Source: Pecten maximus
Lineage: Eukaryota
Direction: 5' to 3'
Length of the DNA: 64,000 nucleotides
NCBI RefSeq assembly: GCF_902652985.1
Contig: NW_022983091.1
Coordinates: forward strand, 1-64,000
The position numbers and the translations under genes are program-made. Of the stretch, positions 2,076 to 53,647 are shown in pieces. The notes under the pieces were generated by a model. It searched no databases. It saw only the letters and a program-made list of their open reading frames with translations, and had not been told where the DNA came from. The first letter of the stretch is position 1, and each line of letters starts with the position of its first letter.

Positions 2076-2479
2076 GTATACTACAGTATCATTAAAATAG
2101 TTAAAGATTATTCTTAAATAAGATCCTATACCCCTTATGAATTCGATATTTCATTAATGTATAGTTATGTTTTATAAGTTGTACTTTCCATTCATTTGTC
2201 AATAGAAGTGTTATAAATAAAAATGTAGCAAACAAATAGTTTTTTCTTAATCAATCTACTCTACATTCTGATATAGAATCCAGCACTGTCTCTTCATACG
2301 TTGAAACGTTGACCTCTACTTTACAGTAATATCGATGTCTCCTCAGCCTTTTCATATGGGAACGAACTTTACTTTACGGTAGATGACTGATCGACATATG
2401 TCTACTTCGTGACATCCGAAACATAGATTATTGGGATAATGTGATTTATCTCTAAACAATACATTACCGTTCAAATCCT

Positions 2480-3016
2480 GCCCTGCAGGTAGGGCGTAAG
2501 AATTGTACCTGCTGCCCCCATTGCATGATCGTAAGAGGCGACTAAACTTGGGATCTTATCTTTTCTCCTCTTTCGTAACAACTTTCTTCTTCCTAATGTC
2601 TCCCTTGACAGTGCCTCACTTTTGGCCTTTAGTTGAGTGTTCGCCCCTGTGAGGAAAGCTTTGGGTTCTGTCCCCTAGCCGAGACATACCAGAGTCTTTA
2701 AAAAATGGTAGTTGCTACTCCTGCTTAGCGCTCAGCATATTAGGAGTGGGACGACTGGTTCGCCCGTTGTCAGTATAATGTGACCGGGTGGGGTGTGCTG
2801 CTGGGTGTCTTCGGCAGTATGCTTCAGTGAGGTAGCACTATAAATCGGCAAAAGTTCCGGCCTATCACAAGGAGACTTAACACGAACATACCGCAGCCTC
2901 CCAAAACACACATACGCACTCAACACACGCATGCATGTCGCACACACGGGATGCCGTCCTTAAATGACCTTAGCTGTTAATAGGACGTTAAACAAAATAA
3001 ACAAAACCAAACCAAA
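2480..3016 (+). mobile_element. Composite SINE, full length: pseudoknot head + decayed tRNA-like segment + Meta-like core + I/Nimb-type tail
   Basis: Near-identical to 18764-19299 and partly to 51277-51481 and 51948-52343. Core gccgagacataccagagtctttaaaaatggtagttgct...gctcagcat resembles the Meta-SINE domain. Tail gtccttaaatgacc...aggacgttaaac(aaac)n. Confidence 0.85.
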
Positions 3017-14986: not shown

Positions 14987-15214
14987 TTGTTTGTTTGTTT
15001 GTTTGTTTTTGTTTAACGTCCTATTAACAGCCAGGGTCATTTAAGGACGTGCCAGGTTTTGGAGGTGGAGGAAAGCCGGAGTACCCGGAGAAAAACCACC
15101 GGCCTACGGTCAGTACCTGGCAACTGCCCCACGTAGGTTTCGAACTCGCAACCCAGTGGTGGAGGGCTAGTGATAAAGTGTCGGTACACCTTAACCACTC
15201 GTCCACCGCGACCC
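14987..15214 (-). mobile_element. tRNA-derived V-SINE inserted in pPolB, 13-bp TSD
   Basis: A-box TGGACGAGTGG, B-box GTTCGAAAC, V-domain-like ggtttttctccgggtactccggctttcctccac, (CAAA)n tail. TSD ctcttgaaaacaa at 14974-14986 and 15215-15227; excision restores PTLENK-TKYVCH. Confidence 0.92.
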
Positions 15215-18763: not shown

Positions 18764-19299
18764 GCCCTGCAGGTATGGCGTAAGAATTGTACCTGCTGCC
18801 CCCATTGCATGATCGTAAGAGGCGACTAAATTTGGGATCTTATCTTTTCTCTTCTTTCTGAACAACTTTCTTCTTCCTAATGTCTCCCTTGACAATGCCT
18901 CACTTTTGGCCTTTAGTTGAGCGTTCGCCGCTGTGAGGAAGGCTTTGGGTTCTGTCCCCTGGCCGAGACATACCAGAGTCTCTAAAAATGGTAGTTGCTG
19001 CTCCTGCTTAGCGCTAAGCATACAAGGAGTGGGACGACTGGTTCGCCCGTTGTCAGTATAATGTGAACGGGTGGGGTGTGCTGCTGGGTGTCTTCGGCGG
19101 TGTGCTTCAGTGAGGTAGCACTATAAATCGGCAACAATTCCGGCCTATCACAAGGAGACTTAACACAAACATACCGCAGCCTCCCAATACACACATACGC
19201 ACTCACCCCACTCATGCATGTCGCACGCACGGGAGGCCGTCCTTAAATGACCTTAGATGTTAATAGGACGTTAAACAAAATAAACCAAACCAAACCAAA
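18764..19299 (+). mobile_element. Composite pseudoknot-headed Meta-like SINE, full length
   Basis: Aligns end to end with 2480-3016. Confidence 0.88.
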
Positions 19300-36700: not shown

Positions 36701-37771
36701 AGTTACTTAAACCAGAAGTGTTAACCGATGTGCGCGAATGTTTCACAGATCGTCAAAGAAAGCAGAAATTCTACTATGATCGTGGTACAAAACTGGAAGA
36801 AACTCTTAGTAAATGACAAAGGGTTAGAGTAAAGAGTGATGACAAAAAGGAATGGCACTCTGCTAAGGTTGTCGAAAAGGACCCAGGATCCTCAAGATCC
36901 TATAGAGTTAAACGGAAAGATGGAAGCATCATCCGGAGGAATCGAAGTCATATAATTCCAGTTCGCGAAAAAGTCGTCCAGGAAAATCTTGATAACTTGG
37001 AATCTTGTGTGTCCCCTGACAGTGACACAATTGATCTTAAATGTGAGGAAGGTGAAACCAAAGAAAATGTCCTAACCTCTCCTGCAGCTGTTGGTTCAAC
37101 AAATTCAAACGCGTATGTAACTAGGAGTGGTAGACAGTCCAAAACCCCTTCCAGACTGGATGACTATGAAGTGTATTGGTGTTAAGTGACAGTGTTATTC
37201 ATTATAGTTCATTTGTTTAGTTATTTCCAAAGACTGGGCTAAAGTCAGATAACTTTAACCACATGGTTATTATTTCAAATAATTATTATAGTATAAACCA
37301 TTAAGAACTGATTTAAAAACTTTAAAAGGGAGATGTCACATAATGTTGATAAAGACATTCCGGAATTATCATACCGGAAACGGATCCTATTGCATAATGT
37401 ATTATGTAAGCTTTGGCATGATCCTGATTAAATCAGTGTTACAAATGGAGCTTGACCTTACTTGACCTTATTATTACAGTTGCAGGGATCGGGTCTGGAT
37501 GTTCATCAGTTGGGCCCTTTCCACCTACGAAATGCAAACTGCAAATATAGGTATCTTTGGTGACGTTCCTCTCAGAGAAATTTTCACGAAAGCAAGCTTT
37601 CCTCCATCGGATGCACGTCTCGGGGTTCTTTTTCATCTGAGGGAATCTGATGAAAAACACTGCTTGCATTTCTTCTCTGCTTGCATATCTTGAGTCACTG
37701 TTACATTTCCCATATGCACAGTGATTTGTCGCTCCTTTCTTTATCGAGCCTATCGTTGAAACCGACGCCAT
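30748..37771 (-). pseudogene. THAP + HTH + DDE_Tnp_4 (Harbinger-like) transposase, multi-exon
   Basis: THAP exon 37771-~37478 (CAYGKC...RFP...W...ICSLHF...PIP); small exons near 32850-32690 and 32215-32090; catalytic exon with ILDATE, MVGRGF (D to G) and RIHVERVI; frameshifts. Confidence 0.88.
33431..37443 (+). mobile_element. Ty3/Gypsy (Mag-like) LTR retrotransposon, 5'-truncated, in a transposase intron
   Basis: Gag with two Cys/His knuckles, protease LDTGA, RT IIDDIL, RNase H VDAS...TDH, integrase GFD/TDNG/NGMVE. PPT aaaagggaga then a 3' LTR TGTCACA...TGTTACA at 37334-37443 (110 bp). Few lesions. Confidence 0.93.
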
Positions 37772-38374
37772 GCCGTAGCCTACCTAGCTAGTTCGCGGCT
37801 AGTTTGTCCGAAAAAGATGGCGCCCGGCGCAAAGCATACTGGGATAGAATCTATTTATAGATCTAGGTTATCCATCGGTGCTATTAGCATAACTAGAATG
37901 CATAGCTTTTATAATCTGTCAATTTGTTTCAAGTCATATCGTCCCAAAATATATATAGCTATATACAGTGCCGAAATGGTTTCTTTCAGATGCATGCTGT
38001 GACGAAATGTTTTGCTTCGATGACATCAACAAAATGCCAATTCGCCCTGAAAGTGAAAAACACAAATCTCATTTAATAGCAAAATAATGGATGCAGGCTT
38101 AAAGCCTCTATATCCATACCATAATAACAAATACATTCAATATTAATGTAGTAATTTGGTGCGGTATACAGCTTAAGCGTTAAGGAATTGGTATTATTAT
38201 TATAATTGGTAGCTGAAACAATTATTTTTGCAATGTTCATCTAGAGCAATCTCAAAATTTAAAGTGCTGCCCGCCTCTACAACAGATTGTGGCAAGCTGT
38301 TGAATATATCTACTATTCTTGGACTGAAAAAGTTTTTCCTTATATGCAGACGACATCTTTTCTGATATATTTCT

Positions 38375-38407
38375 GCCCTGCAGGTAGGGCGAAGAAATGT
38401 ACCTGCT
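38375..38407 (+). repeat. Pseudoknot head stub
   Basis: gccctgcaggtagggcgaagaaatgtacctgct, matching 2480 onward. Confidence 0.85.
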
Positions 38408-39009
38408 TGTAGATTGTAGCTTCCGGAGTTAGCATCTTTCTCAAACAGAAACTTTGTTTACCGTTACTTGGTAGATACAGATTCATTTTAAATAATAATG
38501 TCTTAACTGTTCCTGAGATTTTTTTTTCTAATACCTAAACTTCTAACGAGATTTGGATACATCAATTTGGTTGAGGAAAGAAAACAAAAAGACAATTTGT
38601 TGTTGGTGCGCTGATTCTCAGTAACTATAGTACCCTATATCTTGACTGGTGTGTTTGGTGGAGATACTCCTTTGTTGTAGGTTCACTGATTCTCAGTAAC
38701 TATAACATCCATTTCTAGACTGGTCTTTTTATTGATGGCGGACATTTCTATTTAAAAACATTGGTATATAGTCTTAACTGGACACCGATAATGATACTGT
38801 TCAATTTCGGTTAATATGATAGTCATTGAAACAATGATACTGTTCTATTTCAGATAGCCGTAAATCTATTTTTAACTGGTGAACTACTTCACTCTGATTA
38901 TCCTTAAGGAGTTAGGAGTGATCCTGATCGTCCTTTATTCCGATCCTTTGATCTTGTAGGATTCAGGAGCAGGACGATGTGGTCCAACCCTATTATACAA
39001 CTACTCACA

Positions 39010-40537
39010 GATTACCTTCCTTAAACAACACCAAACCCAGCAAAGGCTCAGATGACCCTATCAACGGTCATAACAGGTATGACGCTCTTGCGGACGACAG
39101 TGAGTTTGGTGACAGTAATGCTGCTGTTTCCAGACAGCCTACACCTAGTAGTCTTGTCAGTCCAAAGAGCGTCCATCACGAACGTGGATAGTGGTCAGCA
39201 ATACGAACAATTTTATTATACAATGGAACATACGTGGACTAAGGGCAAATTTAGAAGAGTTTCAAAATTTAGCAAAATAATTTAGACCTGCCTTATTTTG
39301 TCTGCAGGAGGTCATGCTTAAAAACCCAATTACTTTCAGAAATTTCTCGCTCTACAATAGCATCGCAACGGTAGGAAACAGAGGTGGCGCAGCTGTAGGT
39401 GTCCATAAAAATGTTCCTCACAGAATTATCACGTTAAACACAAATTTACAGGCTGTTGCTGTCTGTGCAACTTTACACAGACAAGTAACTATCTGTTCAA
39501 TTGATCTTCCTCCGAGTATTGCTTTCACATACATTATTCTCGGAGATTTTAATTGGCATAACAGTCTTTGGGGCTCTCCGAACACAGATGAGAGAGGAAG
39601 ACGCATTGAGGAATTTATAGATAAAACAACTTGTGTCTTTTTAACAATAATACCCCAACATATATACACCATGCTACAGGCTCTCTTACCCACATAGACC
39701 TATCATTATGCCATCCATCCATATTACTCGATTATAACTGGAGGGTAAATGATGATCTATGTGGGAGTGACTACTTCCCTATTTTTCTTAAGAATATTGG
39801 GACTCCTCTTGATAAACCACTTCCTCGATGGAATGTGCACAAAGCAGATTGGGTCCAATTCCAACACCTGTGCAACGAGGAGCTTACTGTAGTAAAATTC
39901 ACTAACCTCGATGACCCAATTAAAACATTCACTGAAACTCTTACTTCTATTGCCACAAAAACGATACCAAAGTCCGTCCCAAAACCTACAAAGTTCCTTT
40001 TATCTGAAGAATCTTTTATCAATAGATCCGGCCGAAAGGCAGCTCTAAGACGATCCTTGACTTCCCCTACAACTGAAAATTAGAATAATTTTAAAATTTG
40101 GAGGGCGAAGGCTCGGCGATCTATTAAGTCCGACAAAAAGAATAGCCGGAAGGAATACATTTCTTAAATATCTTCAAATACATCATCTAAACAGACGGGA
40201 TCAGGTATGAAAAATAAGTGGAAAACGAAAAACAGCACCATCATCCCATCTTATCAACAATAACCAAATCTTCTCTTCTTCATCTGAAATTGCAAATGCA
40301 TTTGCTAAAAATATAGCCCAGAACTCATCCGCCAAAAATCACTCCAAAAATCACTCCAAAAAATTCCAAACTTTCACAAAAGACAAAGAAAAGAAACGTC
40401 TTAATTTCAAATCATCCAACACAGAAAGTTACCACAAGCCTTTCGATCTCCCCGAGTTGCTTGAATCGCTAAAAAGATCAAACGATTCAGCAGCTGGGCC
40501 AGATGAAATTCCGTACCAATTCCTGAAACATTTACCA
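39010..40537 (+). mobile_element. Internal fragment of the same I/Nimb LINE family (ORF1 end + APE domain)
   Basis: Collinear with the reverse complement of ~24610-26175. Confidence 0.92.
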
Positions 40538-40541
40538 GTTT

Positions 40542-40567
40542 CAATTCTTACGCGCTACCTGCAGGGC
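40542..40567 (-). repeat. Pseudoknot head stub
   Basis: Minus strand gccctgcaggtagcgcgtaagaattg. Confidence 0.85.
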
Positions 40568-40569
40568 AG

Positions 40570-40919
40570 GAATGTAAATATATGCAGATGAGCTCAACGA
40601 AATGTGTTCCTCCTCGCCAATGGAAGCGGTGAAAGACTGATTAAGTGACAAGAAACCTTCCAGAAACCTTGAAAAATATGAGGAAAAAGGCCTTTGGAGC
40701 AGAATAGTAGAATTATGTTCTGCATACTTGGAGCAGAATAGTAGAATTATGTTCTGCATACTATATGCAGAACATAATTCTACTATTCTGCTCCAAAGGC
40801 CTTTTTCTTAATATTTTCAAGGTTTCTGGAAGGTTTCTTGTCTCTTAACCAGTCTTTCACCGCTTCCATTGGCGAGGAGGAACACATTTCGTTGTGCTCA
40901 TCTGCATATATTTACATTC
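40570..40919. repeat. Foldback inverted repeat (~160-bp arms) with a 34-bp direct duplication at the apex
   Basis: gaatgtaaatatatgcagatgag... is the reverse complement of ...ctcatctgcatatatttacattc; centre ~40761-40763. Confidence 0.95.
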
Positions 40920-42009
40920 TGTGTTGCATTTGCCTATATGTCGTTAGTAAACCAAATTGTATTCATGAGACTGTATACTACAATTTACAGTGATTCGGTC
41001 AGTGTAGGAATACAGCTTCAGGTGTTGTAGGTTAAAACAATGGTCCCCAGTTACATTCGGTCTAGAGAGCATTCGAATGCTAGCATTTATCTACATAAAC
41101 CAACACAAAAAAGCAACGCAAGTTATGAGAGTAAAATATTATAATAAAAAAAAATTGATAGGCTCTATTCCTGATCTACAGGAAGTAATCAAATTGTCAC
41201 TGTCGTCACACAGGGGTTCGTTGTCGAATTGTCAGAAATGCTAGACACGCCAACATTAAAATTCCAGCATTTATAAAAAAGAATCTTACGAAAAATCGGC
41301 AGTATCGACGTGGTTTATGTTATTCACTGATGTCAAAGGCCTACTATACTCCAAAATCGAGCCCCTGTGAAGTTGAACATCGTCTGCTAAGTTAGCGACA
41401 CTGATGTGACCGGTTAGACTGGATTATGTTTCTAATGAAATATCCTTGGAATCGTTTTCATCTACTCTCAAGACGACGTTCATTTAGAATTTAAGAGATA
41501 ATATTCCTCTGAAAATAACGTATATCCAGTCGATAGAAACATAAGTGTTTCCGAGGAATCGAGTCTGTCCAGTACAATACCCGTTCAACGCCGCATCACT
41601 TCTAAATGTTAACCGTATATCATTGCGCCGGAAAACGGCTTTATTTTTAAACAATCAGAAATTATGCATTTGTGAACAATTTGAAGATATCTAGAAACGT
41701 TTATAAAATATACTATAAAGCCAAATTGTGCAAAAAACATTTCATGTGATTGCTATTGATAACGACATGAGGGACTTTATTATTCTTTCTGGAAATTTCG
41801 GCTGTTCCGGTATTTGAACTTAATGATGTCAGTGATGGGAGAAGCGGCAAATTTAAACGCGTCTTAAGCTACAGTAAATAAAATAAAATTAGAAATGTAA
41901 ATATAAGCATTGAACTGTTACCAAATGGTAGTATACAGTCGATATGAATACAATTTGGGTGACAGATAAATATTTCATTAGGGTGACATGAAATATCAGT
42001 TCAATGCTT

Positions 42010-42659
42010 AAAAGGATATTTCGCATCTGGATTAAGCAGATGGAACGTAACCATACCCAATGACCAAATGTCCATTCGTTTTAGCGTTCCAATGTCAGCA
42101 TGTGTAGTGCGTCTAAGAATGGCTTCAGGGGCCATATAAACAGGTGAACCTCTTTATCAAATTTAAAGTGCTTGTTTTATATAAGGTTCGAGTTTGCATC
42201 AGCAATTATCTGGATTCCCCAGATGTCAGTAAGTTTGGCTACAACTGGTTTATTGAGCCACCAATACTTCAGATCTTCCTCCCTGCATTCCAAATAATGT
42301 TGGTTTGACACAAGGATGTTATCGGGTTTTAAATCACGATGAACTATTCCTTTCTCGTGCAGATAGTCCAGGCCTGTACATATATCTAACGCTAAATGAT
42401 AGGGCATGTGTTCAAAACCTTCGAAGCCATTAATTCGATCGCACGTTTTCAAAAGATCCTTTACATTTGAAACAGAATCATTGTTCAGATTGAGTGTTTC
42501 AAAAGAGAATGACATAAATTCTAGAAGGGAGTTATCAGTCATTGGATATCCGTGAATTTGCAAAACATTTGGATGCCCTTTCAATGATGCCATCAATTTT
42601 GCCTCCTTAAGAAATAAATCATTCTCATTGTCTGTATTTTGTAACTCGCAACTCCGCAT
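42010..42659 (-). pseudogene. Ser/Thr protein kinase fragment, intronless
   Basis: FLKEAKLM...HPNV, HRDLKPDNILV, frameshift at the DFG position, GSPVYMAPE, DIWSLG; the Gly-rich loop is missing. Confidence 0.88.
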
Positions 42660-42692
42660 TTTGCAACTCGCAACTCGAAGAAAGAAACTCTC

Positions 42693-42715
42693 TTCTTACG
42701 CCCTACCTGCAGGGC
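42693..42715 (-). repeat. Pseudoknot head stub
   Basis: Minus strand gccctgcaggtagggcgtaagaa, 23/23 identical to 2480-2502. Confidence 0.85.
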
Positions 42716-43883
42716 CAACTCTAATAGAATAAACTAGATTTACATGATTTGGTGTTGTGCATTAGGTACTTTTATTCACTTTTAATTGGAATACTATTTT
42801 GGAATAATATATTCCTGGATAAAATGCAGTATATATAATGAGGTAAGTGAGACTTCTGTATCCATGTGTATAAATTGACCATGTGCTGTAGCACGTGCTT
42901 ATGTTGTTTTGTGTTTATATTCTAGGTGATGGAAGTTCACCTAAGGTCAGATTTATTCATATTCGGAATGGGAGCAATTTCAGATTGTCCAGAATTAATC
43001 TCACTTCAGATTTTTGTGCTGTAGATTCTAATTATATATTAATTTATCAAAAAATTGAAGAAAACAAAATTGTTCTTTAAATCTTGAGCTTTATCCACAA
43101 TATTTTGATGAATTATTGTATTTGATTTTTCGGCATAGCCGTATAATTTTCTTTTGACAGGTGGCGTTACTGGTCAAGATGAAGTATGTGATTGGTCAAT
43201 GTAGCCGTAAATGCAAAATGCAGATATGCAGTTAAAAACGAAACAAAGATAAGATTGAATGCAAGCTGAATAAGTAGATTATCTTTTTAAATGACACATT
43301 AATAAAATCATATTCCTGATTCAAATGCAGTTTTATTATTACTAAAAATGATTCAAACTAAGATAATTTTGTTCTTCGTGCTAAAACGCATTAGTTCGGT
43401 AATTTATTTCACCATTATAACCATCAGCATTAAAACTATGCCTTTTATCTTTTTTAAAGATATTTCCTGTTTCTGGTACTTTAGAAATTACCGAAAAAAT
43501 TGTCTGAGCTGTTATCTCAGCTGCTAAAAACTAGACTTTTTCAAAAGGCTCCGCCTCTTACCTTTTATAATCTACCCTCCCCCCACCCCCCGGTTAATCT
43601 CTAACAACATCCCATAAGAGGTCACGTCGGGGTGACCTTTTGGATTAGCCAATCAAATGACTGCTTCCATAATAGTGAATTGTATGTGTCCGAATTAACA
43701 TGACCAGAGTGCATAGCTGTCAATTTGTTTCAAGTCATTTCGTCACAGAAAACATATAGCTATGAATTTATACATGGTGTACCGAGATGGTTTATTTCAG
43801 TTTCGACAAATTGACAATTCACCCTGAAAGTGAAATACCCTGATGCGATGTTAGACGTTCATGTAACGTAGTGAGAATGGCCA

Positions 43884-46800
43884 TCTAAATTTTAATTAGA
43901 TTGGGTTTCTTCGATGGGGTGTATTCTCCAGTCGACCACCTCTTGTAAGAAATGAATGTAAACAAGAACACCAACGCTAGTAAGTAATGTTTCAACACAT
44001 AAGGGGCTGCTCGGGTGGGCTGTTCTGAGCTGTTCCGAACTGTTCCGCACAACACGATGACCCGAGTGCAAATGGACAGGAAGTGATATCCCGAGTGCAA
44101 ATGGACAGGAAGTGATGTCCCGAGTGCAAATGGAAAGGAAGTTGATACTATACAATATGGCGGACATGGCGCTGATGACTGTTGTTGCCGATTTCATGGG
44201 TGTATTTGACGCATGGAGGAAGACGGATATAGAACAGGACTGTCTACCCGTATTTCTGAACGGACTGATAGAACTTTTGTAAGCTATTTGGTGTTTTTTA
44301 AACGAACATTAATGTTCGGTTATTGCCATCAAGAACTGGACTGAGAAATATGACCATATTTGGTAGCCACATTCACCAATACGCCATCTACTGTCTGTTT
44401 CAATGAAATATGGCTGCCCCCATTGCCTTACGCTTCAAATAATTTACTTGCAAAAACATCTTCGTTTTATGTAGTAGTTTTACCGAAAATGTTGAAATGT
44501 ATTCAGTAGATGTTTTCAAGATGCATACGATTTGAGAAATGCATAACGCTAGCGAAATGTGAAGACTAAATGAACCTGAACTTTGCGAATAACTCCAGGT
44601 CAATATATTTATGTAAACAAATATTGCGCAGGCGCATTCGTCTCCGGATGTTTAGAAAGTTTTGCTCTTCCGTGTTCATTCCAAAACGGCTGACATTATA
44701 GCATAGGTCTGCAAATATGTCCGCGATTTACTTAAATTTGTAATATATATATTCTAGAATGTTACATCATTATCAACTAGATGAGTATTTCTATAATTTA
44801 GAGAAAGAAATATATCAATAACGGCATACGAGACGATACATTGTATCATACTATAGGTACGAGACGATACATTGTATCATACTATAGGTTACTGAACATG
44901 TTTGCGAGAAAGATAGATACTAGGTGGCATTTGTGGTCAGGGTGACTGGTCATAGCGTTAACATTGTCATCGATTTCCATATTCCATTTTCCTTTGACGA
45001 AAACGACCAATAAATCAAATGCAAATGATAATATCTTGTTGCCATGTGCACGGGATTGGTTGTTGTAGGCGATACTTGGAACGTATTTACTGTTGTAAGG
45101 GAGGTAACTGCAAGATTACGGAAATCAAACGTTAAACCAATTTGATTGGTCGTTTCTTCCATGACTTTGGCAATGGGTTTACAATCGAGGTGACAGATAA
45201 CTACGGCAATATTCAGATGATATCCACAATAACATTTTTAGATACGTGTGGTCGGCAGTTGTCATGTTTAAAATGAACAATTATATAGCTTGTTTTTATT
45301 TCGGCAAAGTCGAGAATATTTACTGAAACGGACCACAGGTGAAGCAGACTTGGAAATACCGAAACGAAGAAAAACGGGGCTTAATTATAATATAGGCCTA
45401 AATTGGCATTATTTTCAGAGAATTGACCCACATATATGTTTTTCAATGCCTATTTGTATCGTATGTAAAATATTAGAGGTTTACAAATTTTAAATTAATT
45501 TTTCATTTGCGAATCGCGGCCCGATTGTCGTTAGAGTTGAATTACCGAAATGGCCGATAGTGGACCCAAATCGACATTTTTACGAGAGAATGGACCCAAT
45601 ATAGGATCTATTAATCTTTGGTGTGTGTATAGAGACCTGGAAGTATTTTGAAAGAATTTGCAAAATACCGAATTCACGATCAAATTTTCGATTGTGACGA
45701 ACTACTGAGACGGTGTTAGTTCATGTCAAGTCAATCTGATTAAAATCAACTGTTACATGATATGGCTATACGTTTAGTATGCACTACTCCTACGTATTTT
45801 TTTTATAGCCGGAAAACGGAAATCCGGATTATCTAAAAACAAATGCAAAAAGACTTGTGATATTCACTTAATTTGATATTCAGCCATTAATTGTTATTTG
45901 TAGTTTTATAACTTCTGAAATAGTGTGATTGATTCTCTATATAATATTGCTGTGGAACTTGTGTTATTTTTCAAACAAATTCATTTTGATAATTTGTTAA
46001 TTTAGAACGTTCATCAAGTCATGATCAAGACTTGAAATTCTCGCTACACCATACTTCAAACACAGTAATCAATGAATTGATCAATTGAAAATTGAAGTCA
46101 AGCAAATGAGTTAATATTTACCTAAATAATTTTTCAATATACAACACATGTTCAGATGACTATTTGTGCCATGCTGTTACAAGATTTCAGTTGCAATTCT
46201 AAAAGTCAAGCAAATGAATTAATATTTACCTAAATAATTTTTCAATATACAACATATGTTCAGATGACTATTTGTCCCATGCTGTTACAAGATTTCAGTT
46301 ACAATTCTAAAAGTCAAGCAAATGAGTTAATATTTACCTAAATAATTTTTCAATATACAACACATGTTCAGATGACTATTTGTGCCATGCTGTTACAAGA
46401 TTTCAGTTATAATTCTAAAATTGAATTAGTATGTAAATATATGTTATACTGTCAATATCCACAAAGCGAGTGTAGTCTACTGTACTCAAAGTCCTGCCAG
46501 TAGATAGCGGTACATATACTTACTGCTTACATCTAGTGCTTACTTGTGTGAACTATAAATCAATAACAAAATGGTTCATATATTCCTATATATGACTTCA
46601 CAAATTATGCGGTGTCTGAAGATCTGAATGAAGTGAATAAACGATGTATTAAATTATTTTTATGAAATATCCAAGTCATAGATCATTCTTTTTTTTAAAT
46701 ACTGATTTCAGGTCCATTTTGGTAATTCAACTATAACGGCAATTAAAATACTTCTCATTTTTTTTAAAGCCGGAAAACGGAAATCCGGATTATCTAAAAA

Positions 46801-48689
46801 CAAATGCAAAAATACTTGTGGTATTCACTTAATTTGATATTTCAGCCGTTAATTGTTTTTTGTAGTTTTATAACTTTTGATATATTGATTCTCTATATAA
46901 TATTGCTGTGGAACTTGTGTTATTTTTCAAACAAATTCATTTTAATAATTTGTTAATTTAAAATTTTCATCAAGTCATGATCAGGACTTGAAATTCTCAC
47001 TACACCATACTTCAAACACGGAGTAATCAATGAATTGATAAACTGAAAATTTACCTTAAATATTTTTTCAATATACAACAAATGTTCAGATGACTATTTG
47101 TGCCATGCTTTTACAAGATTTCAGTTACAATTCTAAAATTGAATTAGTATGTAAATATATGTTATCCTGTCAATATCCACAAAGCGAGTGTAGTTTACTG
47201 TACTCAAAGTCATGCCAGTAGATAGCGTGCGGTACATATACTTACTGCTTACATCTAGTGCTTACTTGTGTGAACTATAAATCAATAACAAAATGGTTAA
47301 TATATTTCTATATATGACTTCACAAATTATGCGGTGTTGAAGATCTGAATGAAGTGAATAAACGATGTATTACATTATTTTTATGAAATATTCAAGTCAT
47401 AGATCATTCTCTTAAAAATATTGATTTCAAGTCCATTTTGGTAATTTTACTATGACGGCAATCAGGCCTAGAATGGCGAATAAACCCCTAATATTTTACA
47501 TATGATTAATTTTGACATTGGAGAACATATAATTGTGTCCATTCTCTAAGCACTGGTAGAATGTACAGAATAGAGGTTCATAAATATATTCTCAAAATTA
47601 CTAATTACCCCGGTAAATATAACATTTTACATAAACCTCCCATGACTGATGGTGAACTTAAACTTGCAAATCTCCTGTGTCATTCCAATTTTGATATGTG
47701 TAAATATATACACGTACTGTATATATATAGTTATAGATATGGAATGCTTCACAATTTGCATACAGTTATGGAATCTTATAACACCCCCAAAAATGTTCTC
47801 TCCACATAAAGGATGTGATTTGTGCAATTACATTGCTGAATTGTGTGGTTCAGTATGATTGGATGATCAACATTGGAAAAGGACAATAAATAGGGAATGT
47901 GTCGTCCCATCGAATGGATTGTAATCTTTGTGATCAGGTTTGAAGTTGAAAATGAAGCTTGAAGTCTTCTTTTCCTGTTTGCTGAATTATTCGATGAAGA
48001 TAGTCTTTATCTGGTTGTTATTCTTTATCACATTGTTTACAATACTGTAATTATACCAGAAGTTTATCTTCTCATATACAGATTTATTAACATCAAATGA
48101 TTCCTGAACAAAAGGAGTCAGGTGTTTTTGTTTTGAAGTACCATAAATGCTTGACTGAGTACAGTTTCAATAGGATACATTCTTAATTCGGGCCTTGATT
48201 AGCAGCTCTGGTTTTGGTTTTCAGTAATTCTTTATGTGTGTTTCATCATATTAAGTTGAAATGCAACTATGTATGCTAAACTAACGATGGAACTAGCCTA
48301 AATTTAGTGCATATTAGAAGTTGGCATCAATAAGGTCACAGAGTCCTGGCTGTATTATAACTGATGATGCCTTCCCGAAAGAAAGAAGACATATTTTATT
48401 TTCATCGATCCAAGATAGATCAACAAACTTCCAATTTCAATTAGGACCTTACAGAAACATGCATGTGTACAATCAAATCAGAACAGCTGCAAACATTTCA
48501 AATTATTTGCAATTAATTCCTAAACCGATATCAGTAAATTTATCAACTTAAAACTTAGAAGATTACTGATTTTGCATTAAACAATAATGTTCGTTTACAG
48601 TACTTCCAGTACTTTGATTTCATAAAAAAAACAAACGAAATACTATAAAAACAGATCTGCATATTGTACGGTACCGTGCCAAAAGCTAG
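43884..48689 (+). mobile_element. Non-autonomous Helitron (~4.8 kb)
   Basis: Candidate 5' A|TC at 43883/43884; 3' hairpin gtacggtaccgtgc (48666-48679) then CTAG|T (48686-48690); internal part recurs at 57215-58505; no coding capacity. Confidence 0.65.
45800..47460. repeat. Tandem duplication (~960 + ~700 bp) with nested ~119-bp triplication
   Basis: agccggaaaacggaaatccggattatc at ~45808 and ~46768; aagtcaagcaaatga unit x3 at ~46095-46420. Confidence 0.9.
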
Positions 48690-51276
48690 TAGTACTGGAG
48701 TAGGCAGTCTATATGTGCTTGACAAGCTAACATTAAAGCGACTATTCGGGGAAGAAATAGGTCAAAGTTGAAAAAACAGCAAATTAATAAAGAAAATACT
48801 CTCTTATGAAAAATTCTGATTTAAGTTTTGGCGATATGTAACCCCTAGAATTAAAAAAAAAAAATTCAGGGAAATCCTCTCGCTGTCGAATGACGAGATA
48901 AAATGCAAATTTCCCGCAAATTTGGGCGCATGCGCAAGAATCTAGGTTTGTAGAATGTAAACATAACCGACAGAAACATGGCTTTCGAAGCCAAGAGATA
49001 TCGGCCTAAAACTGTTACGAGTTCGGCAACAGTGACGTAAACAGAAATGGTCACAGGACAACCCGGTCGTACGACTTGGGAAGCAACACACTAGGTGGGA
49101 GTCATTTAAAGAAGAAAATGGTTGCTCTACAAACGAGAATGCAGCACGGATTCTTCTGGATAAGTGGTAAGCCCGTAGCCTGCGTAGGGTCAGTTCTATT
49201 GTCGCATGTAACTCGTAAATTCCATAATTTTGTTGGCAAACAATACATAAAGTATGTTGCTTGAGCAAATAATATTGGTGTATGGCTTTAAATACAAGTT
49301 CCGTTTTGTTCCATTCTTTGAAATGTGGTGAAAATTACGATTTGTGGGGAAAAGATTGTCATTATAACTGTATAATTCTTAGCAGTACATTATTATTTTT
49401 ACATTTTTCAGGTACACTTCAGTGACACAAGAAGTTCATGCAGGTGAAGACATCTCAACACCAGTTGGAACTTCTATGGGACCGCCATCACATCTGTGCA
49501 CCCCGACACCAGTTACATCTACGACTGCACATGCCCATAAAGAACCTATAGATAGACCTGTACAAATGTCCGATGTCTCAGATATAGAGTAAGTTCTTGG
49601 ATCTAACTATGTTTGATTTATAACCTCTCAAAATATACATTGATGTATCTTAATTTTTTTATTCAGTGTTTATCATTCTGTGTTGAGGTAAACTGTAGCA
49701 GGTCACACATAAATGACATTGTAATTCCATAAATGTTTTTACAACTTATTTTAACTGTTAGACCCAGCACAATATTGTAGGTAGGGTGAGCAGTCAAACA
49801 TACTCAATTTATATTCTGTAATTATAAACATGCTTTGCTGCTGCATGTCATGAATTATACATCATTTCGGGAATATATATTTGCTTTTAAAAGAATTGTG
49901 TAATTTTTCATCATTTTAATATTTCAGAGCTCAGTCATCACACTCGTCTGATTTATCTGGTGTGGACGCATTACAATCAGACTCCGAGAGTAACATTAAT
50001 GCCAGTTTGCTTTCCCGTTACCAACAGAAGGCTAAAGAGGCTGATACCTCATTTATTGAGTAAGTTTGTTGTGTTATTTTTTATGGTGTGTTCTTGTTGC
50101 TATAATAATACATTTACTTGTATATAGTAAAGAGGTATTGGTACGCCCCATATCCCTGCAGGACATTATGTTCTGTCAACTGTCATCCTGCACACAATCT
50201 GGTTTGGTCTGTCTCCAGCACTTGTCATTGGAACTATAAACTTGGGAAACGTTACTTTTACCCAGATGAGAAGTATGTACCAAAACTAGTTAACTGTGAC
50301 CTTTATTTTGACATTAAACATATATAAAGGATTTGGCTTATGCTGACTATTACATTAATTGTCTCAAGAATTTAACTTACTTATTTGGTCTCGGCTCTAC
50401 CAAGGAGAGTATGTCTTATTGGACCTTCACTAACAAAGTCCAACATTAAGAGAAAACAAAACTTTCAAAAGCAGAATATGTTATACACACTGTTGTTTTT
50501 TACTTGTTAATTATTAAATGAGGATTTCTCTGTCAGAATCATAGTTTTGTGGGTTTGAACTCCTGCTATGGTAAAGTTTGAAATATTTATTGTATTTCCA
50601 AGAAAAATTGTTCTTTATCCAGGTGTGTTCGTGGTTATTATCTCACCTGGTAAAAAGGATCAAGGTGAACTCATGTCATACTGTCGAGTCTGTCTTTATA
50701 ACCGCTGGTACCCATTGTACAAATGGTAGGACTGAGTGACCCAACAGGGGGCTGGGGGACAGGGCCAAAAGTGGTTAATACAGGTCCTATGGCCCTCTTG
50801 CTATAAGACACTTTGCTTCCATTTGACTTTCAAAATAATGAAATCATCTGTCAAAAAGACTATTTTCATAGCTTATATTTTACTATGGATTATGACTTAT
50901 GTTTAGATGCCAATGGGTTCTGTTCACTTTTGCTTTGGATTTATTGTAGAGTTACTTTAATTGGAGAAAGTGAAGATGATGAAAATGAGGAAGAGTTGTA
51001 CAAAGAGGACCCAACATATAATCCAAGTTATAGTGAGATTGAGGAAGAGGAGGAATACAACCTAGATCTTGACATGGATTTGGAAATGTCATTATGGTAA
51101 TTTACTAAAAACTAAAACTTTTCTGTGATAAAAATCATATCTCCCCAAGTCCACTACCAGTCATCCACATTGCCTCAGTGCTTTCTAGATAAATGTTGCT
51201 GTCATATTGATTTCATTTACTGAATGAGCAACTCAGCAGCTGGTCTCTTTACTTCTAGTTCTACTTGTAATTTGTC

Positions 51277-51481
51277 CCCCTGCAGGTAGGGCGTAAGAAT
51301 TGTACCTGCTGCCCCCATTGCATGATCGTAAGAGGCGACTAAATTTGGGATCTTATCTTTTCTCTTCTTTCTGAACAACTTTCTTCTTCCTAATGTCTCC
51401 CTTGACAATGCGTCACTTTTGGCCTTTAGTTGAGCGTTCGCCCCTGTGAGGAAGGCGTTGGGCCCTGTCCCCTAGCCGAGA
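51277..51481 (+). mobile_element. Pseudoknot-headed SINE, 3'-truncated (first ~205 bp)
   Basis: Matches 2480-2685, then stops abruptly. Confidence 0.88.
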
Positions 51482-51947
51482 TGTATGAATAATGAAATAA
51501 TTGTATACTGCTAGGCAAGATATCTGTCTTGATATGAATAATAATAAAAAAATCTACTTTCAGTCAAGATGGAGAGGAATTCTACACCATGTAATAAACA
51601 GACATGAGTGGCTAGTTGGAGATGGCATGCCCCTTTGCCTGAACCAGGACCTGATGAGGAGACAAAGTGGCTTGATGCAGAAAGTGATGCCCACCAGGCA
51701 TTGGAGAAACTTGTGTATGACACACGCTTTCTTCATACACTGAAGTACTGTGTGAACTTCAGGTACTAAGCAATTTGTTGAATACTAATTGGGATTTTCT
51801 GGTTAGACATAACCGTCTTTATGTAACTTTGAAAAAAAAATAATAACAGGAAAATAGAAAGGTATAACACAATATTTCATATTAACATTGTATTTATTGA
51901 TGCACAGTTTACCAGTACAATCTGAATCAACTTAATTGTCCTTTGTA

Positions 51948-52343
51948 CTTTTGGCCTTTAGTTGAGCGTTCGCCGCTGTGAGGAAGGTTTTTGGTTCTGT
52001 CCCCTAGCCGAGACATACCAGAGTCTTTAAAAATGGTAGTTGCTACTCCTGCTTAGCGCTCAGCATATTTGGAGTGGGACGACTGGTTGGCCTGTTGTCA
52101 GTATAATGTGACCGGGTGGGGTGTGCTGCTGGGTGTCTTCGGCAGTATGCTTCAGTGAGATAGCACTTTAAATCGGCAAAAGTTCCGGCCTATCACAAGG
52201 AGACTTGACACGAACATACCGCAGCCTCCCAAAACACACATACGCACTCACCACACGCATACATGTCGCACGCACGGGAGGCCGTCCTTAAATGACCTTA
52301 GATGTTAATAGGACGTTAAACAAAATAAACCAAACCAAACCAA
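51948..52343 (+). mobile_element. Same SINE family, 5'-truncated (headless), 9-bp TSD
   Basis: TSD tcctttgta at 51939-51947 and 52344-52352; (CAAAC)n tail. Confidence 0.9.
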
Positions 52344-53647
52344 TCCTTTGTAGCAAGTGTTGCATTTATATTTTATATAGGTATTTGTGACATAACACTT
52401 TCAGTTACTTGTAATAAAACAACATGCAGCATACCATTATAGGAAATCACCACAGATGGAAGACTATTTCTAAATAGCACAAAGAAATGATTCGCTCATC
52501 ATTATATACCGGTACCCATATCTTTTCAAAGCAATTGATATTGACAAAAAAGGTACAAAAGTGTTAGTGTTTCTTAGTTTAGATGCAGTTTCAATGACTA
52601 AATAGATCAATAAGCTATGTGATTTTTCTTGTAGGCATACTGGCGAGCTCGATAATTTTCATGAAAACAATTTGATGTATGCTGCAAAGAGATTTGCTTA
52701 CAGGTACTTTTTAGCAATCATACTTTACATACATTTTATTCATTACTGATATTCTGATAATGCATTAGGTTATATAACATCAAAAGAAATAGAGTCAAAA
52801 CAGTGGAATTTTTTTCATTTCTTTCCAAGATGCATATTTTAATTTATATAACCTATATAAGAGGTCTAATGGGCCTGAATCACTCATCTGCTCCTAAAAC
52901 AACTTTTATGGTAATCTAGGTCATTTATAGACAGTCCTCTAATTAATGCTGATTACCGCTTCCTTACTATCAGAGGAAGCTAGTTAGCTTTATTCATGTA
53001 AGATCCATGGCCATGTGACCTTTATTAAAGGTCAAGGTCATACATTTGAAAAAGAAAAAAAAAACTTGGAAGCACTTCACACCAGCATGCTACAGGCCTA
53101 TTAACAAGTCCCAGGGCCTCTTGGTTATTGAGAAGAGCATATTTAAGGTAAAAAATGACGCCATCTGAATTAGAAATGTAATGGAAATATACTTTAATTG
53201 TCAATTTATTTTTCTTGTACAGCTATCCAATGTATGAGGCACGCAACCAGTTGGCAGTCATTGACTATAAAATGCACAAAGACCGTAAACATGCCAAGGA
53301 CAAATCGGGAAAGCCTATGTAAGTGATTGTTTGCAATTTCGCTATTTGATAAGAGATGTTACTAAGCCGGATATGAGATCCCCCCTCCCCCCTTTTTTCA
53401 TTTTTCTTATATGGAGTAGATCCTAGAGGCTGAGTTGGTTCAACATAACACAAATAATCTCATTATTTTTCATTGTAATTCGTGTCTTTCCATTGGCTGA
53501 AAACGTAACACGTGACGCACTATAAATAAGCTGTGTAAACTTTTACAATAATATTGTAAACCTCGCATTACCATAAATAGATGTGACGCAGCGTTCATCT
53601 TTCGGGTGCTCTCGGACTTTCTCTATTGCCGTAACGAACACCCGTGA

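What the first reader, a model, noticed from the sequence alone, without database searches (positions are those of the whole stretch)
38375..51481. Reverse truncation: 5'-anchored stubs of the pseudoknot head mark rearrangement junctions
Seen: four copies start at the same position ((G)CCCTGCAGG) but end after 33 nt (38375+), 26 nt (40567-), 23 nt (42715-) and ~205 nt (51277+), with no tail or TSD. Three sit at demonstrable breakpoints: between a foldback and a truncated LINE, at the truncated 5' end of a kinase, and in the interval where the KolobokP catalytic core is missing. Known: target-primed reverse transcription gives fixed 3' ends and variable 5' ends (as at 51948-52343), the opposite pattern. 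Inference: the RT may finish by jumping onto its bound 5' RNA module and so cap unrelated cDNA, or it may use the module to patch double-strand breaks. Either would be a cargo-capture or genome-restructuring mechanism.
Basis: partly seen in the sequence, partly recalled or inferred. Interest (0 to 1): 0.85.

Follow-up and report, generated by a model that had tools for sequence, protein, structure and literature searches.

The report
Short SINE head fragments, ordinary origin
The four head-only pieces of a scallop-type SINE are real, but genome-wide such pieces are rare and no commoner than breaks elsewhere in the element. They fit known causes (other mobile DNA inserting into the SINE, deletions, occasional template switching by the reverse transcriptase), not a new capping or repair mechanism.

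Summary
Observation confirmed. The window holds two full copies of a ~539-nt SINE-like retroposon that starts CTGCCCTGCAGG and ends in an (AAACC)n tail. It also holds four fragments that keep the true 5' end but lack the 3' part: 38373-38407 (+), 40542-40569 (-), 42693-42715 (-) and 51278-51481 (+). None has a tail or a TSD.

A head-specific mechanism is not supported.
- Exact 35-mers occur 2,017 times at the head, 2,005 times at positions 115-149 and 4,362 times near the tail. Heads are therefore not in excess.
- A breakpoint test of identical design gave 13 hits just after the head and 12 at an internal control site.
- Short stubs amount to about 1% of heads.

Right edges in the window:
- 42693 abuts the outer end of a foldback-type DNA-transposon inverted repeat.
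- 38407 and 51481 abut edges of low-copy units.
- 40542 abuts a LINE interior.

A 97-99% identical second copy on contig C17 has two of the stubs but lacks 2.28 kb starting exactly at the end of the 38373 stub.

Elsewhere in the genome, 4-5 of 11 resolved stubs lie inside composites bounded by one TSD. These are template-switch chimeras or twin priming, both known LINE side reactions.

The parts
2478..3016 (+). Full-length SINE copy (positions 1-538), used as reference for the family
   Evidence: 97.8% identical to the consensus of 25 full copies
18764..19299 (+). Full-length SINE copy (positions 3-538)
14990..15049 (-). 3'-terminal SINE fragment (positions 477-537), an ordinary 5'-truncated copy
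38373..38407 (+). Head stub S+ (SINE 1-36, one 1-nt deletion). Also present on contig C17.
   Evidence: Contig of another individual across the junction:
38408..38995 (.). Unit U, low-copy sequence. Its only paralog (C6:4293451, 84%) starts its similarity exactly at 38408. Absent from the C17 copy.
38996..40538 (+). 5' part (about 1,543 nt) of a LINE, with an endonuclease-RT domain and the start of the RT. Its 5' end is intact and it is cut at 40538, whereas 19 other copies continue.
   Evidence: PF14529
40539..40541 (.). TTT filler between the LINE interior and stub S-
   Evidence: read directly
40542..40569 (-). Head stub S- (SINE 1-28, one mismatch). Absent from the C17 copy.
40570..40922 (.). 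Local foldback: arms 40570-40694 and 40795-40919, 91% complementary. The outer ~14 nt of the arms (about 40906-40919 in the right arm) are the start of the abundant repeat RepY, which begins about 40906. C17 lacks most of the left arm.
42177..42659 (-). Protein-kinase fragment (Pkinase profile positions 37-136). Near-identical paralogs on C16 and C9 match only up to 42636.
42636..42692 (-). RepZ: outer end plus 2.5 units of a 21-22-nt tandem repeat. Elsewhere it forms inverted pairs of arrays 1.4-2.4 kb apart, so it is read as the terminal inverted repeat of a foldback-type DNA transposon. More than 10 other loci start at the same nucleotide.
42693..42715 (-). Head stub (SINE 3-25, no mismatch). 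Also present, 100% identical over 111 nt, on C17.
42717..43130 (+). RepX: truncated copy of a repeat of at least 1.45 kb and about 10 copies. In the other copies about 900 nt more lie to the left of this point; these are absent from the window.
51278..51481 (+). 5'-anchored SINE fragment (positions 4-207). Copies of the sequence to its right, on C11 and C17 (92%), begin exactly at 51480/51481.
51947..52343 (+). Classical 5'-truncated SINE insertion (positions 141-537) with its own TSD TCCTTTGT (51939-51946 and 52344-52351)
   Evidence: TSD read directly

Best explanation
The four copies are genuine 5'-intact, 3'-truncated fragments of a young, abundant SINE of ~539 nt (at least 4,000 heads) that spreads by target-primed reverse transcription. 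It makes 10-15-bp TSDs and carries an (AAACC)n tail.

Their shared start is the normal left boundary of an insertion, where the cDNA ran off the 5' end of the RNA. Their right ends were made by several ordinary events, not by a head-directed mechanism:
(i) Other mobile DNA landed inside the SINE. This is shown for 42693, whose end is the terminus of a foldback-type DNA-transposon inverted repeat. It is inferred for 38407 (edge of unit U) and 51481 (edge of a unit also found on C11 and C17).
(ii) Deletion or rearrangement in a repeat-dense, inverted-repeat-rich interval. This is inferred for 40542, which joins a LINE interior.

Stubs S+ and S- are probably copies of one junction, because both follow a similar flank.

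Rare errors of the reverse transcriptase (template switching, twin priming) also make such pieces in this genome. They do so at any position of the element, and none of the four window copies shows their hallmark, one TSD around the whole composite.
For: Family and mechanism:
- 10-15-bp TSDs end right before CTG in about 20 full copies.
- 25 of 28 randomly listed heads are full length.

No head excess: exact 35-mer counts are 2,017 (head), 2,005 (positions 115-149) and 4,362 (positions 474-508).

No head-specific break. A 19-mer anchor, then 10 free positions, then 6 forced non-canonical positions gave 13 hits after the head and 12 at the control site. The mix was similar: unrelated continuation, jumps within the SINE and small indels.

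Rarity: about 6 true stubs at 18% sensitivity implies about 30-40 among roughly 3,300 exact heads, or about 1%.

Edges in the window:
- RepZ begins at 42692 in more than 10 loci and forms inverted array pairs elsewhere.
- The only paralog of U starts exactly at 38408.
- Copies on C11 and C17 start at 51480/51481.
- RepX is cut at 42717 and its left part is absent from the window.

Second copy: C17 shares S+ and the 42693 stub but lacks 38408-40688. The foldback arms differ by 8-9%, whereas C17 and the window differ by about 3%. The left arm is therefore older than the split, and C17 is the deleted form.
Against: - Three stubs of 36 nt or less within 4.3 kb is far more than the genome-wide rate predicts, about 0.01 per 64 kb. 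This needs shared history, a very rearrangement-prone interval, or the look-elsewhere effect of scanning about 14,000 windows.
- The 2.28-kb difference from C17 begins within 2 nt of the end of S+. Under a simple deletion this is a coincidence.
- The remainder of each interrupted SINE was not found in the window, so every 'nested insertion' also needs a later loss.
- The flank similarity that links S+ and S- is weak (z about 3).
- The S- junction (LINE sense strand, TTT, antisense head running to nucleotide 1) also has exactly the geometry of reverse transcription primed at a break.
Confidence: 0.62

Rival explanations
1. The window stubs, above all S- at 40542, were made directly by reverse transcription in known L1-type side reactions. 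In this reading a free DNA 3' end at a break, or a second nick, anneals inside the SINE RNA and is extended to the RNA's 5' end. This is endonuclease-independent 'patching' or twin priming. Alternatively, the enzyme switches from another template onto a SINE RNA. In all these cases the piece was short from the start.
For: Genome-wide, 4-5 of 11 resolved stubs are single-event composites:
- L076: TSD TATATCATCTAG around head 4-27, a 685-nt repeat and a full SINE.
- L073: TSD CTCTCTTAACA around 1-34|295-539.
- L080: TSD CAATATTAA around a mosaic with inversions.
- L081: antisense 539-67 followed by sense 1-25, the twin-priming geometry.
- L056: TSD GTCAGTTCTG around head 1-28, an inverted full copy and 160-539.
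- L012/L013: head repeated in tandem before a full copy.

In the window, the + strand reads LINE ...CCAG, TTT, then antisense head 28 to 1. It then joins the foldback with a shared CAG. There is no tail and no TSD, and the LINE 3' part is lost. These are the hallmarks reported for endonuclease-independent L1/Alu insertions (from memory: Morrish 2002; Sen 2007; Srikanta 2009).
Against: - None of the four window copies sits in a TSD-bounded composite.
- The 42693 stub ends at the terminus of a DNA transposon, which a nested insertion explains directly.
- A single deletion in a pre-existing SINE gives the same S- sequence.
- The breakpoint rate after the head equals the control, so nothing demands priming in the head.
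Confidence: 0.25
2. One reading: a structured 5' RNA module (the 'pseudoknot head') is held by the reverse transcriptase, which ends synthesis by jumping onto it. This would be a dedicated mechanism that caps foreign cDNA or patches breaks and restructures the genome.
For: - All four fragments share the true 5' end.
- Three of them are 36 nt or shorter and lie at junctions.
- Several genome-wide breakpoints fall at positions 28-29 and 34-35, the edges of a 7-bp stem (GCAGGTA/TACCTGC).
- A tripartite chimera is capped by head 4-27.
Against: - There is no enrichment of breaks after the head against an internal control (13 vs 12 hits) and no excess of heads (2,017 vs 2,005).
- Breakpoints within 25-35 are spread out (25, 26, 27, 27, 29, 29, 34, 34, 35).
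- There is no Rfam match, and the predicted fold is no better than shuffles.
- Stubs are about 1% of heads.
Confidence: 0.05
3. The junctions are assembly artefacts of a small unplaced, repeat-rich contig.
For: - The window is an unplaced contig (C3962) that duplicates part of C17.
- The 40542 junction is unique in the assembly, and the contigs shown did not confirm it.
Against: - S+ and the 42693 stub are identical on C17.
- A 546-nt contig from a different individual spans 38272-38817 with one difference.
- Similar stubs occur on placed chromosomes.
Confidence: 0.04

Closest known systems
Template-switch chimeric retrocopies made by LINE reverse transcriptase (U6/L1, Alu/L1, tRNA-half/L1; PMC13174262, PMC4476161; Buzdin et al. 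2002-2003 from memory)
   Same: Genome-wide examples here (L076, L073) are bipartite or tripartite insertions inside one TSD. Their 5' piece keeps the RNA's true 5' end, and it is joined in sense to 5'-truncated or full copies that carry the tail.
   Different: Here the capping RNA is a mollusc SINE and the piece is only 24-34 nt. None of the four window copies shows the single enclosing TSD and tail that define such chimeras.
Twin priming / 5' inversion of L1 insertions (Ostertag & Kazazian 2001 from memory; PMC2912911)
   Same: L081 (antisense 539-67 next to sense 1-25) and L080 have the inverted-5'-segment geometry with short TSDs.
   Different: In the window, the S+/S- inverted pair flanks 2.1 kb of non-SINE DNA and has no SINE body or tail beside it.
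Endonuclease-independent (non-classical) L1/Alu insertion at DNA breaks (Morrish 2002; Sen 2007; Srikanta 2009; all from memory)
   Same: S- has no tail and no TSD. It is 3'-truncated but runs to nucleotide 1, has a 3-nt filler, and adjacent DNA (the LINE 3' part) is lost.
   Different: This is not distinguishable here from a deletion within a pre-existing SINE, and no empty allele for that junction is available.
Nested transposon insertion followed by deletion
   Same: The 42693 stub ends exactly where a DNA-transposon inverted repeat begins. 38407 and 51481 coincide with edges of other repeated units.
   Different: The rest of the interrupted SINE and the far ends of the inserted elements are missing from the window, so extra deletions must be assumed.
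tRNA-derived SINEs with conserved central domains in bivalves (PMC11481361, PMC4758252)
   Same: Tailed, TSD-making, LINE-dependent short retroposon with thousands of copies in a bivalve-sized genome. The 19-mer at positions 291-309 also occurs in other repeat families.
   Different: The first ~157 nt are not tRNA-like (ARAGORN and Rfam negative). Family membership was not tested against published consensus sequences.

Membership tests
SINE / non-autonomous non-LTR retroposon mobilised by TPRT | Target-site duplications flanking full copies | tested here: met
   10-15-bp TSDs in about 20 of 25 full copies
SINE / non-autonomous non-LTR retroposon mobilised by TPRT | Fixed 3' end with a simple-repeat tail; 3' parts more frequent than 5' parts | tested here: met
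   (AAACC)n tails; 4,362 3' 35-mers against 2,017 5' 35-mers
SINE / non-autonomous non-LTR retroposon mobilised by TPRT | Pol III-type (tRNA/5S/7SL) head and a 3' end shared with a partner LINE | tested here: inconclusive
   No tRNA or Rfam match. Weak A/B-box-like motifs near positions 165-230 were seen by eye only. No LINE 3' end was available to compare.
Template-switch chimeric retrocopy | One TSD and one tail enclose both parts, joined in the same orientation | tested here: not met
   Not met by any of the four window copies. 51947-52343 has its own TSD that excludes 51278-51481. Met elsewhere by L076 and L073.
Twin-primed (5'-inverted) insertion | An antisense 5' segment that runs to nucleotide 1 lies directly next to the sense 3' segment with its tail, inside one TSD | tested here: not met
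   No SINE body or tail lies next to S+, S- or the 42693 stub. Met elsewhere by L081 and L080.
Endonuclease-independent (non-classical) insertion | No TSD, no tail, 3' truncation, microhomology or filler, loss of flanking DNA | tested here: met
   S-: all of these features are present. They are not specific, because a deletion within a SINE gives the same picture.
Endonuclease-independent (non-classical) insertion | The pre-insertion (empty) site shows a break or deletion healed by the short insert | not testable with these tools
   The only second copy (C17) lacks the whole 38408-40688 block, so it is not an empty site for S- alone.
Self-cleaving or other known structured RNA at the 5' end (e.g. 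HDV-like ribozyme) | Match to a curated covariance model, or a fold more stable than chance | tested here: not met
   No Rfam match at the gathering threshold or at E<=1. MFE z = -0.2. Pseudoknots are not modelled by that tool.

The most novel reading that the evidence does not exclude
Free DNA ends in this genome, at chromosomal breaks and perhaps at the ends of excising DNA transposons, are now and then healed by reverse transcription primed on the 5'-terminal region of the SINE RNA. This would leave head-only 'scars' of 25-36 nt. The 38-43 kb interval would then record several such repairs, including a polymorphic 2.28-kb block bounded by inverted head scars.
Probability: 0.12. Interest if true: 0.5.

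Novelty: new member of a known kind. Interest (0 to 1): 0.2.

Why it matters
The high-interest claim was a new RNA-module-guided way of capping cDNA or patching breaks. It does not survive a genome-wide control, so it need not be pursued as a new mechanism.

Three modest points remain:
- A young, very uniform SINE family in a bivalve shows the same side reactions known from mammalian L1/Alu: TSD-bounded template-switch chimeras, twin-priming inversions and internal jumps. This suggests that these are general properties of LINE reverse transcriptases.
- The pair C3962/C17 offers a sequence-resolved 2.28-kb structural difference at a stub boundary. Long reads could settle which form is derived.
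- The anchor-plus-forced-mismatch pattern test is a cheap way to compare breakpoint rates along a repeat when the genome cannot be downloaded.

Tried and rejected
- TIRs of a DNA transposon (my first idea for the inverted pair 38373/40569). Rejected because the motif is the 5' end of a TSD-flanked, tailed retroposon.
- The stub at 40545-40567 as natural LINE coding sequence (it reads ILTRYLQG in frame). Rejected because 19 other LINE copies diverge at 40538.
- A specific endonuclease target in the head at position 28/29. Rejected because the TSDs of full copies show no target consensus beyond A/C-rich starts.
- 51278-51481 plus 51947-52343 as one split or chimeric insertion. Rejected because the 3' piece has its own TSD.
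- My early estimate of a tenfold enrichment of breaks after the head, based on 3 of 28 sampled heads. Withdrawn after the same-design control.
- A second control anchor at positions 291-309. Unusable, because it lies next to a G-run with frequent 1-nt indels and in a core shared with other repeat families and satellites.
- Homology of the flanks of S+ and S-. Only weakly supported (z about 3) and kept as 'probable', not shown.
- Bulk retrieval of 200 kb for an unbiased census. Later searches returned no loci, so RepZ, U and the unit at 51481 were judged from match coordinates only.
- Reads. Only short contigs were available. They confirm the S+/U junction but say nothing clear about 40538-40570 or about the C17-type joint.
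- The search of earlier findings.
Full report
**What is there**

The motif CCCTGCAGGTAGGGCGTAAGAA occurs six times in the window, against none in 100 shuffles.

Two occurrences head full-length copies of a ~539-nt element, at 2478-3016 and 18764-19299.

Against a consensus built from 25 full copies, BLAST gives these extents:
- 38373-38407 (+): positions 1-36.
- 40542-40569 (-): positions 1-28, followed by a 3-nt filler.
- 42693-42715 (-): positions 3-25.
- 51278-51481 (+): positions 4-207.

There is also a tail piece at 14990-15049 (-) and a 5'-truncated copy at 51947-52343.

All four fragments keep the element's 5' end and lack the 3' part, the tail and a TSD.

**What the element is**

The genome, G000, has 918 Mb in 3,983 contigs. 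From memory these figures fit the scallop Pecten maximus, but I did not test that.

- The genome holds 4,147 matches to the 22-mer with at most one mismatch.
- Of 28 independent exact heads listed by position, 25 are full length. Three are cut at positions 103, 128 and 324.
- About 20 full copies have 10-15-bp TSDs that end right before CTG. The element therefore begins CTGCCCTGCAGG and ends in (AAACC)n.
- This is a bona fide TPRT-mobilised SINE-like retroposon.
- Rfam finds no family on it and ARAGORN finds no tRNA.
- The first 83 nt fold no better than shuffled sequence, z = -0.2. That tool does not model pseudoknots. The 'pseudoknot head' remains unverified.

I could not download the genome, so I used pattern counts.

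| Position in the SINE | Exact canonical 35-mers |
|---|---|
| 7-41 (head) | 2,017 |
| 115-149 (internal) | 2,005 |
| 474-508 (near the tail) | 4,362 |

Heads are not in excess over the region just downstream. The 3' end is about twice as common as the 5' end, as expected for TPRT.

I then searched for an exact 19-mer anchor, followed by 10 free positions, followed by six positions all forced to differ from the consensus.

- After the head this gave 13 hits.
- With an anchor at positions 115-133 it gave 12 hits.
- The composition was similar in both: unrelated continuation, jumps to other parts of the SINE in sense or antisense, and small indels.
- An earlier pattern for breakpoints at or before position 29 gave 12 hits, only 3 of them true stubs.

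With 18% sensitivity, short stubs number a few tens per genome, about 1% of heads.

**What genome-wide stubs are**

I resolved 11 stubs.

At least four lie in composites enclosed by a single TSD:
- L076: TATATCATCTAG | head 4-27 | ~685 nt of an abundant tandem-repeat element, starting at that family's own edge | full SINE with tail | TATATCATCTAG. This is a clear single-event template-switch chimera.
- L073: a copy reading 1-34|295-539 with TSD CTCTCTTAACA, nested in another SINE.
- L080: a mosaic with inversions inside TSD CAATATTAA.
- L081: antisense 539-67 next to sense 1-25, the twin-priming geometry.

The others are less clear-cut:
- L056: TSD GTCAGTTCTG around head 1-28, an inverted full copy and 160-539. 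This is either a complex single event or a nested antisense insertion with target deletion.
- L054 and L074: stubs lying 0-77 nt from an independent SINE insertion that has its own TSD.
- L072 and L077: the stub continues into low-copy DNA.

But this is the known template-switch and twin-priming repertoire of LINE enzymes (PMC13174262, PMC4476161, PMC2912911), and the control shows that it is not aimed at the head.

**The window's stubs one by one**

(a) 42693-42715 (-).
- On the minus strand the stub is followed at once by RepZ (42692 down to 42636). More than 10 other loci begin their similarity at the same nucleotide.
- The 21-22-nt arrays of RepZ occur elsewhere as inverted pairs 1.4-2.4 kb apart, for example C9:12569430(+)/12571814(-).
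- I read RepZ as the outer end of a foldback-type DNA transposon that inserted into the SINE at position 25.
- After 57 nt comes a protein-kinase fragment (Pkinase profile positions 37-136). Its near-identical paralogs stop matching at 42636.
- On the stub's 5' side lies RepX, cut at 42717. Its left ~900 nt are absent from the window.
- The ordinary sequence of events is: SINE into RepX, transposon into SINE, then deletion.

(b) 38373-38407 (+), called S+.
- It is followed by unit U. The only paralog of U (C6, 84%) begins exactly at 38408.

(c) 40542-40569 (-), called S-.
- The + strand reads the LINE sense strand up to its position ~1,543 (40538; 19 other copies continue).
- Then comes TTT, then the antisense head 28 to 1, then a local foldback.
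- This fits a deletion with one end in a SINE. It fits equally a break-primed reverse transcription of the SINE RNA's 5' end.

(d) 51278-51481 (+).
- Paralogs of the sequence to its right (C11 and C17, 92%) start at 51480/51481.
- The neighbouring 51947-52343 piece has its own TSD, so the two are separate events.

**The second copy**

C17:14.446-14.451 Mb matches window 37560-43420 at 97-99% identity. It carries S+ and the 42693 stub unchanged.

After S+ position 34, however, it runs straight into the inner part of the foldback. It lacks 38408-40688, that is U, the LINE 5' part, S- and most of the left foldback arm.

The two foldback arms differ by 8-9%, whereas the two copies differ by about 3%. 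The left arm therefore predates the split, and C17 is most simply the deleted form.

The deletion starts within 2 nt of the end of S+. I cannot explain that other than by the instability of a region full of inverted repeats.

The flanks upstream of S+ and S- are weakly similar (z about 3). This hints that the two stubs are copies of one junction.

**Artefact check**

- A 546-nt contig from another individual spans 38272-38817 with a single difference.
- C17 independently holds two of the stubs.
- The 40538-40570 junction is unique in the assembly, and the short contigs shown could not confirm it.

**Is the local cluster more than chance?**

At roughly 30-100 short stubs per 918 Mb, three within 4.3 kb is unexpected for independent events. 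Three things weaken this:
- The interval is about 10 times richer in this SINE than average.
- Two of the stubs may be one event.
- The finding was picked from some 14,000 windows of this genome.

I do not regard the cluster as evidence for a mechanism.

**Verdict**

It is not supported as a new or head-directed mechanism, nor for the four copies in the window.

The best reading is a mixture of nested insertions, deletions and rare known TPRT side reactions. The rival that I cannot exclude for S- is an endonuclease-independent patch of a break, which is itself a known process.

Noticed in passing
L076 (G000:C13:3481597-3484631), locus positions 1485-2735: Tripartite single-event chimera: a 12-bp TSD TATATCATCTAG encloses SINE head 4-27, ~685 nt (about 4.7 units of ~145 nt) of a very abundant repeat (3,834 first-look candidates), and a full SINE with tail.
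   Followed up: partly
L012/L013 (G000:C1:17205694-17208761), around locus position 1500: The first ~43 nt of the SINE head are repeated twice in tandem (46-nt period) in front of a full copy. This could be re-landing of the reverse transcriptase or replication slippage.
   Followed up: no
window 37560-43420 versus G000:C17:14446270-14451478: The unplaced contig that holds the window duplicates a stretch of C17 at 97-99% identity, with a 2.28-kb indel (38408-40688). At 51481-51800 the identity drops to 92%. It is unresolved whether this is a haplotig or a recent segmental duplication.
   Followed up: partly
window 42636-42692 and many loci (e.g. G000:C9:12569430-12571814): A 21-22-nt minisatellite (unit about GAGTTGCGAGTTGCAAAATGCG) forms inverted array pairs 1.4-2.4 kb apart. 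It looks like the terminal repeats of a foldback-type DNA transposon family. One array lies 6 kb from a kinase paralog on C9.
   Followed up: partly
window 40906-41100 and beyond: RepY, an abundant repeat (about 1,200 first-look candidates, 95-97% identical copies) that starts at about 40906. Its first ~14 nt form the outer tips of the local foldback arms.
   Followed up: no
window 36376-36813 (+) and 37442-37771 (-): ORF fragments with an integrase core domain (rve, just below the Pfam cut-off) and a THAP domain (above the cut-off). The interval is a patchwork of mobile-element remains.
   Followed up: no
G000:C13:2116572-2146714 and G000:C11:8807274-8817505: The SINE core 19-mer GTCAGTATAATGTGACCGG recurs at regular ~3.0-kb and ~2.4-kb spacing. 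This suggests tandemly amplified blocks that contain a SINE or a related element.
   Followed up: no
one search hits, e.g. G000:C1:35979175, C13:14961354, C15:8722409: At the internal control site, three of twelve breakpoints join sense SINE directly to antisense SINE. These are hairpin-like or inverted junctions, one of them with a 5-nt microhomology (GCCTC). Strand-switching junctions therefore occur along the whole element.
   Followed up: no
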